Sequence record: OR258281.1
Length of the DNA: 64,000 nt
Direction: 5' to 3' (one strand)
Positions 21,016 to 44,873 of this stretch are shown one piece after another. The translations under genes were made by a program, and so were the position numbers. Every line of letters begins with the position of its first letter. Position 1 is the first letter of the stretch. The notes beneath the pieces were generated by a model. That model did no database searches and was not told where the DNA came from. It worked only from the letters and a program-made list of their open reading frames with translations.

Positions 21016-21103
21016 GGAGAGTTGGGTGAGCGGCTTAAACCAACAGTCTACTAAATTGTCGCAGAGAAATCTGCCGTGGGTTCGAATCCCACACTCTCCG
21101 CCA
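21016..21103 (+). tRNA. trnS: tRNA-Ser, anticodon ACT
   Basis: GGAGAGT/ACTCTCC acceptor, anticodon arm ACAGT-CT-ACT-AA-ATTGT, long variable arm, TTCGAAT T-loop, GCCA end. Confidence 0.9.
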
Positions 21104-23513: not shown

Positions 23514-23589
23514 GCTTCCTTAGCACAGCAGGTAGTGCAACGCACTTGTAATGCGTAGGTCGGCGGTTCGATTCCGTCAGGGAGCACCA
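23514..23589 (+). tRNA. trnT: tRNA-Thr(TGT)
   Basis: ACGCA-CT-TGT-AA-TGCGT arm; full cloverleaf; CCA. Confidence 0.95.
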
Positions 23590-23596
23590 AGATAAA

Positions 23597-23672
23597 TGCT
23601 CGTTAGCTCAGTAGGTAGAGCAGTTGACTGTTAATCAATTGGTCACAGGTTCAAGTCCTGTACGAGCAGCCA
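23597..23672 (+). tRNA. trnN: tRNA-Asn(GTT)
   Basis: GTTGA-CT-GTT-AA-TCAAT arm; full cloverleaf; CCA. Confidence 0.95.
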
Positions 23673-31705: not shown

Positions 31706-31797
31706 GGGCCAGTTGGCTAGTGGCCGAAGCCGCTCGACTCATAATCGATTACAGTTAACCAGACACATCACAGGTTCGAATCCTGTCTGGCCCACCA
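31706..31797 (+). tRNA. tRNA with CAT anticodon (Met or Ile2) and a 20-nt extra arm
   Basis: GGGCCAG/CTGGCCC acceptor, CT-CAT-AA loop, TTCGAAT T-loop, ACCA end. Confidence 0.85.
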
Positions 31798-35074: not shown

Positions 35075-35347
35075 ATGTTTAGTGGTGCTAAGCTTTTTCA
35101 TATGAAAACTACACACGGTGTTCCACTGGATGTAACTTTACAGGTACTTAAAAGTAAAGGTATAACTGTAACATGGGATAAGTTTATCGATGAAGCCCGT
35201 ATCAACAAATGGTGGGATTTTCAGATTGTACAGTACTGTACTGATTCATTAGGTGATGCAGGTTATAGTACTGATGATATTTCTGAAATCATCCAGCGAA
35301 TGAAACTCTACATTCTTCAGAATGAACACCCAATGATGAAGAAATGA
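35075..35347 (+). CDS. stand-alone protein resembling a helical segment of alanyl-tRNA synthetase
   Basis: SGAKLFHMKTTHGVPLDVT..KGITVTWDKF resembles AlaRS G..AF.LYDTYGFPLDLT..G..VD..F. Confidence 0.5.
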   Translation: MFSGAKLFHMKTTHGVPLDVTLQVLKSKGITVTWDKFIDEARINKWWDFQIVQYCTDSLGDAGYSTDDISEIIQRMKLYILQNEHPMMKK

Positions 35348-43600: not shown

Positions 43601-43610
43601 AAAGTATTTT

Positions 43611-43661
43611 AGGATTCTTACAGCAACCATAATCTTATGCTTAAAGAAAAAAGAGAATCCT
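43611..43661 (+). ncRNA. ACAGCAA hairpin unit 1
   Basis: AGGATTCT-TACAGCAA..AGAATCCT followed by GTATTAATTTAG. Confidence 0.65.
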
Positions 43662-43671
43662 GTATTAATTT

Positions 43672-43753
43672 AGCAAGATAACATAAAGTCATCACAATGT
43701 ACCAGCCAAACTTAGGGTTGGGTATGTAGCCTGACGCACTACTCTTGCAACCA
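43672..43753 (+). ncRNA. cloverleaf-shaped RNA ending in ACCA with non-canonical loops
   Basis: GCAAGA/TCTTGC, ACAT/ATGT, CCAGCC/GGTTGG and GTAG/CTAC stems in tRNA order. Confidence 0.45.
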
Positions 43754-43759
43754 GTATTG

Positions 43760-43818
43760 AAGAATCTTACAGCAAACATAACCCAATCAAACTTTTAATT
43801 TGAAAATTAAAGATTCTT
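43760..43818 (+). ncRNA. ACAGCAA hairpin unit 2 with a tRNA-Lys(UUU)-like anticodon arm
   Basis: AAGAATCT/AGATTCTT stem; TCAAA-CT-TTT-AA-TTTGA. Confidence 0.7.
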
Positions 43819-43839
43819 GTTTTAATTTAGACCAGATTT

Positions 43840-43898
43840 TGGATTCTTCCAGCAACCATAAAACAATCAAACTTTTAATTTGAAAATTAAAGAATCCA
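43840..43898 (+). ncRNA. ACAGCAA hairpin unit 3 with a tRNA-Lys(UUU)-like anticodon arm
   Basis: TGGATTCT/AGAATCCA stem; identical anticodon arm to unit 2. Confidence 0.7.
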
Positions 43899-43922
43899 GT
43901 ATTAATTAGTACTACAAGTTTT

Positions 43923-44040
43923 TGGAATCAAACAGCAAACAATTCTAATGGGAACTTTTTGTCGCGGGTTCGAATCCCTCCCTCACGTCCCGCGTGAGGT
44001 AGCTCAGCGGTAGAGCGAAAGTAGAAAAAAATTGATTCCA
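43923..44040 (+). ncRNA. ACAGCAA hairpin unit 4 containing a circularly permuted tRNA (YrlA Y-RNA-like)
   Basis: Order is T-arm, loop-closed 7-bp acceptor, TA, D-arm; ACTTT/AAAGT anticodon stem opens into the TGGAATCA/TGATTCCA outer stem. Confidence 0.8.
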
Positions 44041-44070
44041 GTTTTAATTTAAACAACATGTGAATACATC

Positions 44071-44787
44071 ATGAGCAAACTAGATAAAAGTACTTCTGAA
44101 GATAAACCAAAAAAAGTTAAGAAAGTAAAAGAGCAGAAGGTTGAAGTACCAACTGTTAAATTTGCATCTTTAACTATCATGGATAATCCTAAAGTAGCAA
44201 CTCATACAATGACTGGTACTATTAATGATAGTACTCATAAAGAGTTCCGCGAGTTCCTGAATAAAGTATTTGAACACAATCGCAAGATTGATGATGATGC
44301 ACGTGAAAATGCAGAGAAAGTTGAATTTAATAAGATTCACGATCCTGAAGCTAAAAATACCTTTGTCTTTAAGAAAGACAAAATTGAGCGTATCAATCTG
44401 GTTATTGATAGTTATGGCGGTGCATGTCGTAGTATGATGAACATTACTGCACTCATGGAAGCATCCCCTATCCCGATTGATACCTACTGCTTCGGCGTAG
44501 CTATGAGTGCTGGGTTTATGATCTTCGTGCATGGCAAACGCCGCTACGTAGGTACTGCTTCAGATTTGATGACTCACAGCTTAAGTACTATGGTATGGGA
44601 TAATGCACCTAATATCTTGACTCAGGCTGAACAAATCAACAAGCTGAATCAGATCTTCCAGAAGATCATTTCTTCTAAAACTGGTCTTACAATGGACTGG
44701 ATGAAGGAAAATGAAAAGATTGATGTTCATTTCTTTGCAGACGAAGCGGTTAAGCTTAAAATTGCTGACTTCATTGTAGAGTACTGA
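44071..44787 (+). CDS. clpP: ClpP-family protease
   Basis: LVIDSYGG, GVAMSAG (catalytic Ser), LMTHS (His), DVHFFADEAVKL. Confidence 0.85.
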   Translation: MSKLDKSTSEDKPKKVKKVKEQKVEVPTVKFASLTIMDNPKVATHTMTGTINDSTHKEFREFLNKVFEHNRKIDDDARENAEKVEFNKIHDPEAKNTFVFKKDKIERINLVIDSYGGACRSMMNITALMEASPIPIDTYCFGVAMSAGFMIFVHGKRRYVGTASDLMTHSLSTMVWDNAPNILTQAEQINKLNQIFQKIISSKTGLTMDWMKENEKIDVHFFADEAVKLKIADFIVEY

Positions 44788-44797
44788 TAAAATATTT

Positions 44798-44852
44798 TGG
44801 ATTCTTACAGCAACCATAACCTTTACTGATGATAAAAGAAACCTAGAATCCA
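44798..44852 (+). ncRNA. ACAGCAA hairpin unit 5
   Basis: TGGATTCT-TACAGCAA..AGAATCCA-GTTTTAATTTAG; inner TTTA-CT-GAT-GA-TAAA. Confidence 0.65.
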
Positions 44853-44873
44853 GTTTTAATTTAGATATAGCTT

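What the first reader, a model, noticed from the sequence alone, without database searches (positions are those of the whole stretch)
43923..44040. Circularly permuted tRNA with the geometry of bacterial YrlA Y RNA
Seen: ACTTT (anticodon-stem 3' strand), 5-nt variable loop, GCGGG-TTCGAAT-CCCTC T-arm, CCTCACG-TCCCG-CGTGAGG acceptor closed by a loop, TA, GCTC-AGCGGTA-GAGC D-arm, G, AAAGT. The anticodon loop is replaced by the outer stem, so the RNA can neither be charged nor decode. Established: YrlA Y RNAs have this T-arm, closed-acceptor, D-arm domain on a Ro60-binding stem and are linked to RtcB RNA-repair operons. Inference: a phage Y-RNA-like tRNA-elbow mimic. The canonical bacterial Ro60-binding sequence is not evident and no Ro60 gene is in this window.
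Basis: partly seen in the sequence, partly recalled or inferred. Interest (0 to 1): 0.9.

Follow-up and report, generated by a model that had tools for sequence, protein, structure and literature searches.

The report
Phage tRNA-like Y RNA family
The flagged 120-base stretch is a real tRNA-shaped small RNA gene with no anticodon loop; it belongs to a large RNA family absent from Rfam 15 and the searched literature that sits next to a Ro60-like ring-protein gene in many phage and metagenome loci, so it probably defines a new class of viral "Y RNAs".

Summary
Window 43922-44041 (+) folds as an outer 10-bp stem enclosing a circularly permuted tRNA body: anticodon-stem helix, T-arm, closed 7-bp acceptor hairpin, D-arm. 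It is not a chance match. A covariance model built only from ten unrelated phage sequences finds it at 92.3 bits (E 1e-17).

It is unit 4 of five tandem small RNA genes (U1-U5, 43610-44853). All share a terminal stem, a (U)UACAGCAA motif right after the 5' strand, a variable insert and a U-rich tail.

The window is the end of Xanthomonas jumbo phage XaC1. Elsewhere this phage encodes XaC1_252, a DUF2828+DUF7788 protein whose predicted fold matches only Ro60 over its full length.

In 80 viral and 80 genome/MAG loci holding this gene, the same RNA scaffold lies beside it on the same strand: 111 versus 5 on the opposite strand, and 1-13 for control motifs. Phages with both gene and RNAs include Felix O1, GAP32 and a mycobacteriophage.

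It scores below the Rfam YrlA threshold (40.9 vs 69) and lacks the YrlA GNCGAA motif. I therefore call it a new variant of the Ro60/Y-RNA kind, not a YrlA member. Binding and function are inferred, not shown.

The parts
43610..43662 (+). U1: short scaffold RNA. Stem (U)AGGAUUCU / AGAAUCCU(G), motif UACAGCAA, 35-nt unstructured insert.
   Evidence: Sequence; repeat family D1-D3; R1 38.9 bits E 4e-6; Rfam Dicty_Class_I_RNA 30.4 bits E 0.0014, below GA 41.5.
43760..43818 (+). U2: short scaffold RNA. Stem AAGAAUCUU / AAGAUUCUU (compensatory relative to U1), motif ACAGCAA, small AU hairpin insert.
   Evidence: R1 28.7 bits; 84-86% identical copies in Serratia BF, Erwinia pEa_SNUABM and Yersinia fHe-Yen9 phages at the syntenic place.
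43839..43899 (+). U3: short scaffold RNA. Stem UUGGAUUCUU / AAGAAUCCAG, motif CCAGCAA, same AU hairpin insert as U2.
   Evidence: R1 35.9 bits.
43922..44041 (+). U4: the finding. A scaffold RNA carrying the permuted tRNA-like module.
   Evidence: R1 92.3 bits E 1.1e-17; Rfam YrlA 40.9 bits; fold.
43922..43931 (+). U4 outer stem, 5' strand UUGGAAUCAA. Pairs with 44032-44041.
   Evidence: Position 4 of the core stem is A:U here against U:A in U1, U3 and U5 (compensatory).
43932..43938 (+). Family motif ACAGCAA directly after the 5' strand of the outer stem; proposed protein-binding site.
   Evidence: CAGCAA was required by the regex scan, so its constancy there is by design. Independently, C-A-G-C-A-A are invariant columns in MAFFT alignments A3-A5.
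43954..43958 (+). 3' strand of the anticodon-stem-like helix (ACUUU). Pairs with 44018-44022.
   Evidence: helix 2.
43964..43980 (+). T-arm GCGGG-UUCGAAU-CCCUC (4 of 5 pairs; C.U at 43965/43979).
   Evidence: T-stem is 100% paired with 4 of 5 pairs covarying in relatives.
43981..43999 (+). Closed acceptor-like hairpin CCUCACG-UCCCG-CGUGAGG (7 bp). The loop reads discriminator U + CC + CG.
   Evidence: Helix 4 is 100% paired, with 7 of 7 pairs covarying.
44002..44016 (+). D-arm GCUC-AGCGGUA-GAGC.
44018..44022 (+). 5' strand of the anticodon-stem-like helix (AAAGU). No anticodon loop follows.
44032..44041 (+). U4 outer stem, 3' strand UUGAUUCCAG, followed by the conserved U-rich flank UUUUAAUUUAA.
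   Evidence: family D3/D4.
44797..44853 (+). U5: short scaffold RNA just downstream of the ClpP-like gene (44071-44787). Stem UUGGAUUCU / AGAAUCCAG, motif UACAGCAA.
   Evidence: R1 30.3 bits.

Best explanation
U4 (43922-44041, + strand) is a phage small RNA gene of the Y-RNA type.

Architecture:
- A terminal stem, plus a single-stranded (U)UACAGCAA immediately 3' of its 5' strand, forms a shared scaffold. The same scaffold is present in the four neighbouring paralogues U1-U3 and U5.
- The scaffold carries a variable 'cargo'. In U4 the cargo is a tRNA body in permuted order (T-arm, closed acceptor hairpin, D-arm, held by an anticodon-stem-like helix). It would present a tRNA elbow but has no anticodon loop.

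Proposed working:
1. The RNAs are cut out of a polycistronic + strand transcript. This is inferred from tandem units with short AU-rich linkers, often inside tRNA arrays in relatives.
2. The scaffold is bound by the phage's Ro60-fold ring protein XaC1_252 (DUF2828+DUF7788, phrog_850 'RNA-binding protein'). This would parallel Ro60 binding the 5' strand of the Y RNA stem.
3. The cargo then tethers other factors to the ring, or decoys them. For U4 these would be tRNA-recognising proteins: host PNPase as in the Ro60-Y RNA-PNPase complex, RNase P, the CCA-adding enzyme, the phage's own tRNA-repair enzymes, or host tRNA-targeting defence nucleases.

What is shown: the structure, family membership, covariation and the gene-RNA association.
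What is inferred: transcription, processing, protein binding and the tether/decoy role.
For: Structure
- The listed arms are in the sequence, and the MFE fold reproduces the outer stem and the T, acceptor and D hairpins.
- The re-permuted sequence is called a tRNA by ARAGORN; the native sequence is not.
- Nineteen relatives keep all four helices with different sequences.
- On alignment A5 (10 sequences, none from XaC1-group phages), 93.1% of cells pair against 67.1% in shuffles and about 40% when partners are slid. 23 of 29 pairs have changes on both sides.

Family membership
- Model R1, built from A5, hits U4 at 92.3 bits, E 1.1e-17. It also recovers U1, U2, U3 and U5 through the scaffold alone.

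Partner protein
- XaC1_252 matches PF11443 (1.9e-31) and PF25043 (3.7e-42).
- The AF2 model of a 94%-identical homologue has pLDDT 89.4 and pTM 0.87.
- Its only full-length Foldseek PDB hits are Ro60 proteins: 2nvo 2.4e-7, 9kop 5.3e-7, 9l5y 1e-5.
- Some phage records already name homologues 'Ro-like RNA binding protein'.

Gene-RNA association
- In 80 viral loci, 111 scaffold elements lie within 1 kb of the gene on its strand. The opposite strand has 5, and seven control motifs give 1-13. 56 of 80 loci are positive.
- In 80 genome/MAG loci (whole loci, up to 3 kb flank) the count is 132 versus 34, with controls at 7-23.
- All 51 R1 hits with E<=1e-3 in 1.19 Mb are on the gene's strand.
- In Klebsiella phage FBKp34, Felix O1 and mycobacteriophage Halena the array starts directly after the gene.

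Known parallels
- Rfam YrlA is the best Rfam hit for U4 and its relatives, at 34-45 bits.
- Bacterial Ro60 systems have one tRNA-like Y RNA plus simpler paralogues (PMC4201824).
- Bas63 gp130 (a Felixounavirus) is described as Ro60-like, lies upstream of the tRNA array and counters the Ppl defence (bioRxiv 10.1101/2024.10.10.617714).
- XaC1 also encodes Rnl1, an Rnl2-like ligase, PNKP, a Thg1-like enzyme, RlaP and a CCA-adding enzyme.
Against: - There are no expression, processing or binding data for any member.
- In XaC1 and its jumbo-phage relatives the protein gene is about 200 kb from the RNA array, so linkage there is only co-occurrence.
- 24 of 80 viral loci and 26 of 80 genome loci gave no element with my crude scan.
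- Similarity of DUF2828 proteins to Ro60 is seen only at the fold level (TM 0.37-0.55). A sequence profile against the PDB gives Ro60 at E 1.6 only, and Pfam TROVE is not matched.
- Bas63 gp130 expressed alone from a plasmid rescues T7 on a Ppl host. At least that activity therefore does not need the phage RNAs.
- No protein neighbour is conserved that would point to a pathway.
Confidence: 0.65

Rival explanations
1. It is an ordinary member of the known YrlA family. It would work with a canonical TROVE-domain Ro60 (Rsr), from the phage or the host, in an RtcB-type RNA-repair setting.
For: YrlA is the best Rfam hit (40.9 bits, E 1.7e-7). The module order is the same as in YrlA (PMC4201824).
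Against: - The score is far below the gathering score of 69, and relatives also reach only 34-45 bits.
- The GNCGAAN0-1G motif that defines the Ro-binding region of YrlA is absent from the 5' region. A different motif, ACAGCAA, is conserved instead.
- The second helix of the YrlA model is deleted in the alignment.
- The associated protein matches DUF2828/DUF7788, not Pfam TROVE.
- No RtcB or TROVE product is named in the parts of the XaC1 annotation I read (record 300-319 kb and 339-349 kb were not listed).
- Not every ORF was scanned, and the host genome was not examined.
Confidence: 0.08
2. It is a permuted gene for a two-piece tRNA-like acceptor. The acceptor loop would be opened by RNase P and 3' trimming, CCA completed, and the nicked molecule possibly aminoacylated, as in two-piece tmRNA or the RNase P-cleaved, CCA-tailed YrlA of M. 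smegmatis. The open CCA end, rather than the closed elbow, would be the active feature. This can coexist with the main explanation.
For: - 8 of 34 tRNA-like relatives encode N-CCA directly after the 3' acceptor strand (binomial p 4.5e-8).
- Three of these also have G3:U70, the alanine identity pair.
- XaC1 U4 has U-CC in that place (43988-43990), and the phage encodes a CCA-adding enzyme.
- M. smegmatis YrlA is cleaved by RNase P and gains CCA (PMC4201824).
Against: - At least 7 of the 34 relatives have closed tetraloops (UUCG, GUAA, UACG, CUUG and others) with no CCA, including the GAP32 orthologue of U4.
- ARAGORN, which also looks for tmRNA genes, finds none here.
- There is no tag reading frame and no anticodon loop.
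- U4 itself lacks G3:U70.
Confidence: 0.12
3. It is debris: the 3' half of one tRNA gene and the 5' half of the next, left by decay of a tandem tRNA pair. The repeated GGATTC/GAATCC hairpins would be intergenic terminators or protein-binding palindromes.
For: - The region lies in a tRNA-rich part of the genome (8 tRNAs in the window).
- Tandem tRNAs do give false hits to such models: R1 scores 36.7 bits at 23531-23636.
- In Serratia phage BF, the position of U5 holds a plain GGATTC-GAAA-GAATCC-T6 terminator.
- A tandem duplication is a plausible evolutionary origin.
Against: - The two acceptor strands are perfectly complementary and only 5 nt apart, and the two anticodon-stem strands also match.
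- The same permuted arrangement recurs with compensatory changes in unrelated phages from several bacterial phyla.
- It is always embedded in the same scaffold, always on the strand of the DUF2828 gene.
- Loops of 35-100 nt are not terminator-like, and the terminator scan finds nothing at the units.
Confidence: 0.04
4. The units are cis-acting elements of neighbouring mRNAs, such as stabilisers, processing sites or attenuators for the ClpP-like gene, and not trans-acting RNAs.
For: Four units precede and one follows the ClpP-like gene. All are co-oriented with the flanking genes.
Against: - In other phages the same elements sit next to a different gene (DUF2828), upstream or downstream of it, or inside tRNA arrays.
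- RaK2 keeps the ClpP-like gene without any such element.
Confidence: 0.04

Closest known systems
YrlA / bacterial Y RNAs bound by Ro60 (Rsr); Rfam RF02553; Chen et al. 2014 (PMC4201824)
   Same: - A terminal stem carries a T-arm, closed acceptor-like stem and D-arm module.
- A short single-stranded motif lies on the 5' side next to the stem.
- There are several paralogues per genome, only some of them tRNA-like (compare YrlB, Yrn2).
- In relatives the RNAs are encoded beside, and on the strand of, a ring-shaped HEAT+vWA protein.
   Different: - It scores below the gathering score (40.9 vs 69).
- The motif is (U)UACAGCAA, not GNCGAAN0-1G.
- It lacks the second helix of the YrlA stem.
- The partner candidate is DUF2828+DUF7788, which no TROVE sequence model detects.
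- No rtcBA context was seen.
- In XaC1 the RNA and protein genes are unlinked.
Ro60 of Thermus phage phiLo with Yrl1/Yrl2 (PMC12135203)
   Same: A phage-encoded Ro60-fold protein with two or more small stem-bulge RNAs encoded next to it. It is among the best structural matches of the XaC1_252 homologue model (9l5y).
   Different: The phiLo protein is a recognisable TROVE protein. Its RNAs carry the CGAA motif, and that paper's text contains no mention of a tRNA-like module (term search).
Bas63 gp130 (Felixounavirus), described as Ro60-like and as a counter of the Ppl defence (bioRxiv 10.1101/2024.10.10.617714)
   Same: It probably belongs to the same protein family. The Felix O1 homologue ORF42 is a 34%-identical hit lying directly upstream of the tRNA array. 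The authors guessed that some 'tRNAs' downstream are Y RNAs.
   Different: No RNA was identified there. Here four scaffold RNAs, one of them tRNA-like, are located in the Felix O1 array. I did not verify the identity of gp130 with the Felix O1 ORF42 orthologue by sequence.
Class I RNAs of dictyostelid amoebae (Rfam RF01414; PMC7919456)
   Same: - Size of 42-65 nt.
- A 6-bp terminal stem in which structure, not sequence, is conserved.
- An 11-nt motif CCUUACAGCAA directly after the 5' strand; U1, U2 and U5 have UCUUACAGCAA.
- A variable remainder.
- Conserved ends AAG...CUGU; the phage and MAG units have (A)AGG...CCU(U)GU.
- Many tandem or dispersed copies, followed by a run of U.
   Different: - They are eukaryotic, with a DUSE promoter.
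- The known direct binder is the RRM protein Rnp1A.
- The CM score is below the gathering score (30.4 vs 41.5).
- Units with AACAGCAA in other loci do not hit the model at all.
- Whether dictyostelids have a DUF2828 protein could not be tested here.
Circularly permuted tRNA genes (Cyanidioschyzon merolae) and permuted two-piece tmRNA genes; named from my own knowledge, not checked with tools
   Same: The 3' half (T-arm, 3' acceptor strand) is encoded upstream of the 5' half (5' acceptor strand, D-arm). In a subset of relatives N-CCA is encoded at the junction.
   Different: Those genes yield a complete tRNA with an anticodon loop, or a tmRNA with a tag ORF. Here the anticodon loop is replaced by a conserved scaffold that also occurs without any tRNA part.

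Membership tests
YrlA (Rfam RF02553) | Score at or above the curated gathering score (69 bits) | tested here: not met
   40.9 bits; relatives 34-44.7 bits; nothing at the gathering threshold.
YrlA (Rfam RF02553) | tRNA-like module: T-arm, closed acceptor-like stem, D-arm on a connecting helix | tested here: met
YrlA (Rfam RF02553) | GNCGAAN0-1G motif near the 5' end (putative Ro60 contact; PMC4201824) | tested here: not met
   The 5' region 43922-43953 reads UUGGAAUCAAACAGCAAACAAUUCUAAUGGGA. It contains no GNCGAA; ACAGCAA is conserved instead.
YrlA (Rfam RF02553) | Encoded within about 4 kb of, and on the strand of, a TROVE-domain Ro60 gene | tested here: not met
   No TROVE match in the proteins scanned. 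The Ro60-fold gene XaC1_252 is DUF2828-type and lies at record 128391-129977, about 200 kb away.
YrlA (Rfam RF02553) | Bound by Ro60/Rsr in vivo | not testable with these tools
   Needs immunoprecipitation.
   U1-U5.
   R1: 92.3 bits, E 1.1e-17.
   XaC1_252.
   Unlinked in XaC1 and in GAP32/BF-type jumbo phages. Met in 56 of 80 viral loci within 1 kb of the gene; 54 of 80 genome loci hold an element somewhere in the locus, up to 3 kb away.
Dictyostelid Class I RNA (Rfam RF01414) | Gathering score of 41.5 bits | tested here: not met
   U1 30.4, U2 19.6, U3 18.2 bits.
Dictyostelid Class I RNA (Rfam RF01414) | Short terminal stem plus 11-nt CCUUACAGCAA motif adjacent to the 5' strand | tested here: met
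   U1, U2 and U5 have UCUUACAGCAA, 10 of 11. U4 has UCAAACAGCAA.
Dictyostelid Class I RNA (Rfam RF01414) | DUSE promoter about 60 nt upstream; dictyostelid genome | tested here: not met
   The source is a bacteriophage genome, so the dictyostelid-genome criterion fails; the DUSE element itself was not searched for.
Circularly permuted tRNA gene giving a functional tRNA | A complete anticodon arm is restored in the product | tested here: not met
   The two anticodon-stem strands are joined to the conserved scaffold, and no 7-nt loop is encoded. The scaffold also exists without tRNA parts (U1-3, U5).
Ro60/TROVE protein family (for the partner XaC1_252) | HEAT-repeat ring plus vWA domain fold | tested here: met
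   Foldseek full-length hits to 2nvo, 9kop and 9l5y, E 2e-7 to 1e-5. The MIDAS-like D-x-S-x-S is invariant: D327, S329, S331.
Ro60/TROVE protein family (for the partner XaC1_252) | Match to the Pfam TROVE model, or sequence similarity to Ro60 | tested here: not met
   Only DUF2828/DUF7788 are matched. The profile against the PDB gives E 1.6 and phmmer gives nothing.

The most novel reading that the evidence does not exclude
Stem + (U)UACAGCAA RNAs may be the dedicated partner RNAs of the whole DUF2828 branch of Ro60-like proteins, from phages to eukaryotes. On that reading the dictyostelid Class I RNAs, whose function is unknown and which are thought unique to social amoebae, would be the 'Y RNAs' of a eukaryotic DUF2828 protein. 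The phage versions would use swappable cargoes as decoys or tethers against tRNA-targeting host defences: closed tRNA elbows, CCA-ended alanine-type acceptors, and a 160-nt structured module.
Probability: 0.2. Interest if true: 0.92.

Novelty: new variant of a known kind. Interest (0 to 1): 0.8.

Why it matters
- Ro60/Y-RNA particles are a conserved but poorly understood RNA-surveillance device. So far partner RNAs are known only for canonical TROVE proteins.
- The DUF2828/phrog_850 'RNA-binding protein' is present in at least 701 phage records. These include Felix O1-like, KVP40-like, Listeria, Staphylococcus, Campylobacter and mycobacterial phages.
- One likely family member (Bas63 gp130) is already reported to defeat a bacterial defence system.
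- Knowing its likely RNA partners, their binding motif and their modular cargo makes the system directly testable, for example by RIP, gel shifts and deletions in Bas63 or Felix O1.
- It gives annotators a model for RNA genes that lie unannotated in these phage records.
- It offers a concrete, checkable lead on the long-unexplained Class I RNAs of Dictyostelium.

Tried and rejected
- **Rfam at gathering thresholds.** On the window and 11 related loci, only tRNAs were found.
- **Promoter and terminator scan of 43.3-45.0 kb.** Nothing was found at the units.
- **Whole-genome search of XaC1 for further copies.** There are none outside 43.6-44.9 kb. The ACAGCAAMCA hits in L004 are a coding repeat.
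- **Sequence-level link of XaC1_252 to Ro60.** phmmer gave nothing and the profile gave E 1.6. Only the fold comparison shows the link.
- **NCBIfam.** No family matched.
- **Conserved protein neighbours of DUF2828 genes.** The best were Metallophos 6, HSP20 5, RNaseH_like 4, RNA ligase 2.
- **Literature.**
  - 'DUF2828' returned only five papers, none on function judging by their titles and abstracts.
  - Motif strings returned only primer noise.
  - The Avesson 2011 paper on Class I-binding proteins is not held.
  - TROVE + Dictyostelium gave nothing useful.
- **Does Dictyostelium encode a DUF2828 protein?** This could not be tested. The protein searches list only the nearest 120-150 hits, with no filter by organism.
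- **Rejected readings.** Permuted tmRNA was rejected: ARAGORN finds none and there is no tag ORF. Chance tandem-tRNA debris was rejected because of covariation across phyla.
- **Tool limit.** The 94%-identical P0001 was used instead.
Full report
**Source and context**

The window is the last 64 kb of Xanthomonas phage XaC1 (OR258281.1, 348,967 bp; window position = record position minus 284,967). XaC1 is a jumbo myovirus related to Cronobacter GAP32, Serratia BF, the Erwinia pEa_SNUABM phages and Yersinia fHe-Yen9. The finding lies in an unannotated 470-nt gap between XaC1_522 and a ClpP-like protease gene (44071-44787). All genes in this region are on the + strand.

The one blemish is a C.U mismatch in the T-stem. 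The minimum-free-energy fold reproduces the outer stem and the T, acceptor and D hairpins, with z = -2.5.

Neither ARAGORN nor the Rfam tRNA model calls a tRNA here. If the two halves are rejoined in normal order with an artificial 7-nt loop, ARAGORN does call a tRNA. 'Circularly permuted tRNA body without anticodon loop' is therefore an accurate description.

**It is one of five units**

Reading the flanks shows that the outer stem and the sequence after it recur four more times:
- U1, 43610-43662
- U2, 43760-43818
- U3, 43839-43899
- U4, 43922-44041 (the finding)
- U5, 44797-44853

Each unit has these features:
- a 7-10-bp terminal stem (GGAUUCU/AGAAUCC and variants), with compensatory U:A to A:U exchanges in U2 and U4;
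- (U)UACAGCAA immediately after the 5' strand;
- a variable insert, which is unstructured in U1 and U5, a small AU hairpin in U2 and U3, and the tRNA-like body in U4;
- a conserved G(U/A)UUUAAUUUAG tail.

No other copy exists in the 349-kb genome.

**Relatives**

Sensitive blastn finds the units at the syntenic place in the related jumbo phages. It also finds U4-like sequences in unrelated ~140-kb Klebsiella phages.
- GAP32 and BF carry arrays of the same scaffold interspersed with tRNA genes. Several of these have T-arm/closed-acceptor cargo.
- In Klebsiella phage FBKp34, three confirmed units and a possible fourth follow directly after a gene annotated 'contains DUF2828 domain'. The third carries the same UCUAAUGGGAACUUU junction and a permuted tRNA body.

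**The protein**

XaC1 encodes one such protein, XaC1_252 (record 128391-129977, 528 aa). It matches DUF2828 (1.9e-31) and DUF7788 (3.7e-42) and phrog_850 'RNA-binding protein'. It has more than 5,900 homologue clusters.

An AlphaFold2 model of a 94%-identical homologue is confident, with pLDDT 89.4 and pTM 0.87. Its only full-length matches in the PDB are Ro60 proteins:
- D. radiodurans Rsr, 2nvo, E 2.4e-7
- a 'Trove domain' entry, 9kop, E 5.3e-7
- the Ro60 of Thermus phage phiLo, 9l5y, E 1e-5

Isolated vWA domains follow these. At the sequence level the relationship is invisible. This explains why earlier Y RNA surveys, which started from TROVE-annotated genomes (PMC4201824), would not have covered these phages.

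Homologues occur in 701 phage records, including Felix O1-like, KVP40-like, Listeria, Campylobacter, Staphylococcus, Enterococcus and mycobacterial phages. Some are already labelled 'Ro-like RNA binding protein'.

In XaC1 the gene lies within a few kb of an Rnl2-like RNA ligase and the CCA-adding enzyme. The phage also has Rnl1, PNKP, RlaP and a Thg1-like enzyme.

**Gene-RNA association**

I fetched 80 viral contigs holding the gene and scanned them for 'stem of 7 bp or more, then CAGCAA within 0-3 nt'.
- Within 1 kb of the gene there are 111 elements on its strand and 5 on the other strand.
- Seven permuted control motifs give 1-13.
- 56 of 80 loci are positive, and 11 of the negatives are the jumbo phages whose array lies elsewhere.

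Eighty genome/MAG contigs, scanned over the whole locus (up to 3 kb of flank), give 132 versus 34, with controls at 7-23, and 54 of 80 loci positive.

Felix O1 has four units in the tRNA array just downstream of its homologue. Mycobacteriophage Halena, a GC-rich genome, has three directly after its 'Ro-like' gene, again with ACAGCAA or GCAGCAA.

No protein neighbour is comparably conserved.

As a weak negative control, RaK2 keeps the ClpP-like gene but has no such element within 8.6 kb. RaK2-type phages are also absent from the 50%-identity tier of protein homologues.

**Covariation and a leave-out test**

In 19 hand-parsed tRNA-like members the T-stem, the 7-bp acceptor hairpin, the D-stem and the connecting helix all pair while their sequences differ.

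On a MAFFT alignment of ten members, none from XaC1-group phages, the proposed structure gives:
- 93.1% paired cells, against 67.1% in column shuffles (0 of 500 shuffles reach the observed value) and about 40% when partners are slid;
- 23 of 29 pairs with changes on both sides.

The covariance model built from this alignment (R1) finds U4 as the top hit in the window at 92.3 bits, E 1.1e-17, full length. It also picks up U1, U3, U5 and U2 through the scaffold alone. Its only other notable hit is a tandem tRNA pair, which is a known artefact type.

Over 1.19 Mb of related loci, all 51 hits with E<=1e-3 are on the strand of the DUF2828 gene.

**Comparison with what is known**

*YrlA.* This is the nearest described family, with the same module order and the same idea of a tRNA-like Y RNA plus simpler paralogues (PMC4201824). 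Membership fails on three tested features:
- the score is 40.9 against a gathering score of 69, and relatives reach 34-45;
- the GNCGAAN0-1G motif is absent;
- the associated protein family differs.

*phiLo.* Canonical phage Ro60 with CGAA-motif RNAs has been characterised for phiLo (PMC12135203).

*Bas63.* A 2024 preprint noted that Bas63 gp130 looks like Ro60, sits upstream of the tRNA array and counters the Ppl defence. Its authors guessed that some downstream 'tRNAs' might be Y RNAs. I found no description of the RNAs themselves, of the ACAGCAA scaffold, or of the DUF2828 association, and no Rfam 15 family covers them. I therefore rate this as a new variant of a known kind.

**Mechanism**

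The committed model has three steps:
1. The scaffold RNAs are processed from a polycistronic transcript.
2. The stem plus ACAGCAA is the binding site of the Ro60-fold protein.
3. The cargo specifies what is tethered or decoyed. U4 presents a tRNA elbow.

Structure, family membership and association are shown. Binding and function are inferred.

Two points weigh against the model. The Bas63 protein alone rescues T7 on a Ppl host. In XaC1 the two genes are far apart.

**Side observations that may matter**

- *Class I RNAs.* U1-U3 hit the Rfam model of dictyostelid Class I RNAs (30.4 bits, E 0.0014 for U1). The shared features are a short terminal stem, CCUUACAGCAA against UCUUACAGCAA at the same place, AAG...CUGU against (A)AGG...CCU(U)GU ends, 42-65 nt length and multicopy organisation (PMC7919456). 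This is striking. However, arrays with AACAGCAA do not hit that model, and I could not test whether dictyostelids have a DUF2828 protein.
- *Thg1-like enzymes.* A Dictyostelium Thg1-like enzyme repairs the 5' G of Class I RNA (PMC5041481). XaC1 also encodes a Thg1-like enzyme.
- *CCA ends.* Eight of 34 tRNA-like members encode N-CCA right after the 3' acceptor strand (p 4.5e-8), and three of these also have G3:U70. This hints that some are opened and perhaps alanylated. XaC1 U4 has U-CC there.
- *Other cargoes.* These include a non-permuted tRNA body and a recurrent ~160-nt module with no Rfam match.

Noticed in passing
window 43608-43668, 43761-43819, 43841-43899: U1-U3 match the Rfam model of Dictyostelium Class I RNAs (30.4, 19.6 and 18.2 bits; GA 41.5). 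They share a terminal stem, a (C)CUUACAGCAA motif at the same place, similar conserved ends and similar size. Class I RNAs are reported as unique to dictyostelids.
   Followed up: partly
L075 7605-7730; L076 7509-7635; L082 2118-2258 (also L028, L032, L060, L025, L082 1525-1660): In 8 of 34 tRNA-like relatives the 3' acceptor strand is followed by N-CCA (p 4.5e-8). Three of these also carry a G3:U70 wobble pair, the alanine identity element, as in tmRNA. XaC1 U4 has U-CC-CG at 43988-43992.
   Followed up: partly
L082 2005-2102: The same scaffold carries a tRNA body in normal (non-permuted) order: D-arm, full anticodon arm, T-arm. The outer stem sits where the acceptor stem would be. Rfam tRNA scores 47.5 bits at 2023-2093.
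   Followed up: no
L031 7469-7633; L037 7482-7645; L046 7475-7637; L066 7484-7646; L065 9397-9553; L068 3991-4144; L087 2777-2936: A recurrent 150-165-nt cargo (..CUGGAGC..UUGAAGG..AAAGUAGACAAC) lies inside the same scaffold next to DUF2828 genes. For the three that were scanned (L033 5002-5166, L068, L087) there is no Rfam match at E<0.5; the others were not scanned.
   Followed up: no
L009 about 2935-2958 (Serratia phage BF): Where XaC1 has unit U5, after the ClpP-like gene, BF has a plain GGATTC-GAAA-GAATCC-TTTTTT terminator hairpin with the same stem sequence. This suggests the scaffold stem and U-tail may double as, or derive from, a terminator.
   Followed up: no
L173 (Klebsiella phage RaK2, 8.6 kb around its ClpP-like gene): There is no WCAGCAA and no R1 hit. 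RaK2-type phages are also missing from the ~50%-identity tier of DUF2828 homologues. This is consistent with joint absence of protein and RNAs, but the whole genome was not checked.
   Followed up: partly
XaC1 record 61886-64758, 105846-106580, 110212-111507, 124968-126230, 132571-133692 (outside the window): The phage carries a full tRNA-repair kit: T4 Rnl1-type ligase, PNKP, Thg1-like 3'-5' polymerase, RlaP, a second RNA ligase with an OB domain, and a CCA-adding enzyme. The Ro60-like gene lies among the last three.
   Followed up: partly
window 35075-35347 (XaC1_496): A 90-aa ORF is annotated 'alanine-tRNA ligase'. It is possibly an AlaRS fragment or editing-domain relative, of interest given the G3:U70 members elsewhere. 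It was not examined.
   Followed up: no
window 21016-21103 and 31706-31797: ARAGORN calls a tRNA-Ser with the unusual anticodon ACT and a 92-nt tRNA-Met. Both are atypical.
   Followed up: no
window 23531-23636: Model R1 scores 36.7 bits across the adjacent tRNA-Thr/tRNA-Asn pair (T-arm of one, D-arm of the next). This is the false-positive type that Chen et al. 2014 warned about for YrlA searches.
   Followed up: yes
L004 47381-47795 (XaC1_281 CDS): Seven copies of ACAGCAAMCA at 48-nt spacing lie inside a coding sequence. This is a protein tandem repeat, unrelated to the RNA family.
   Followed up: partly
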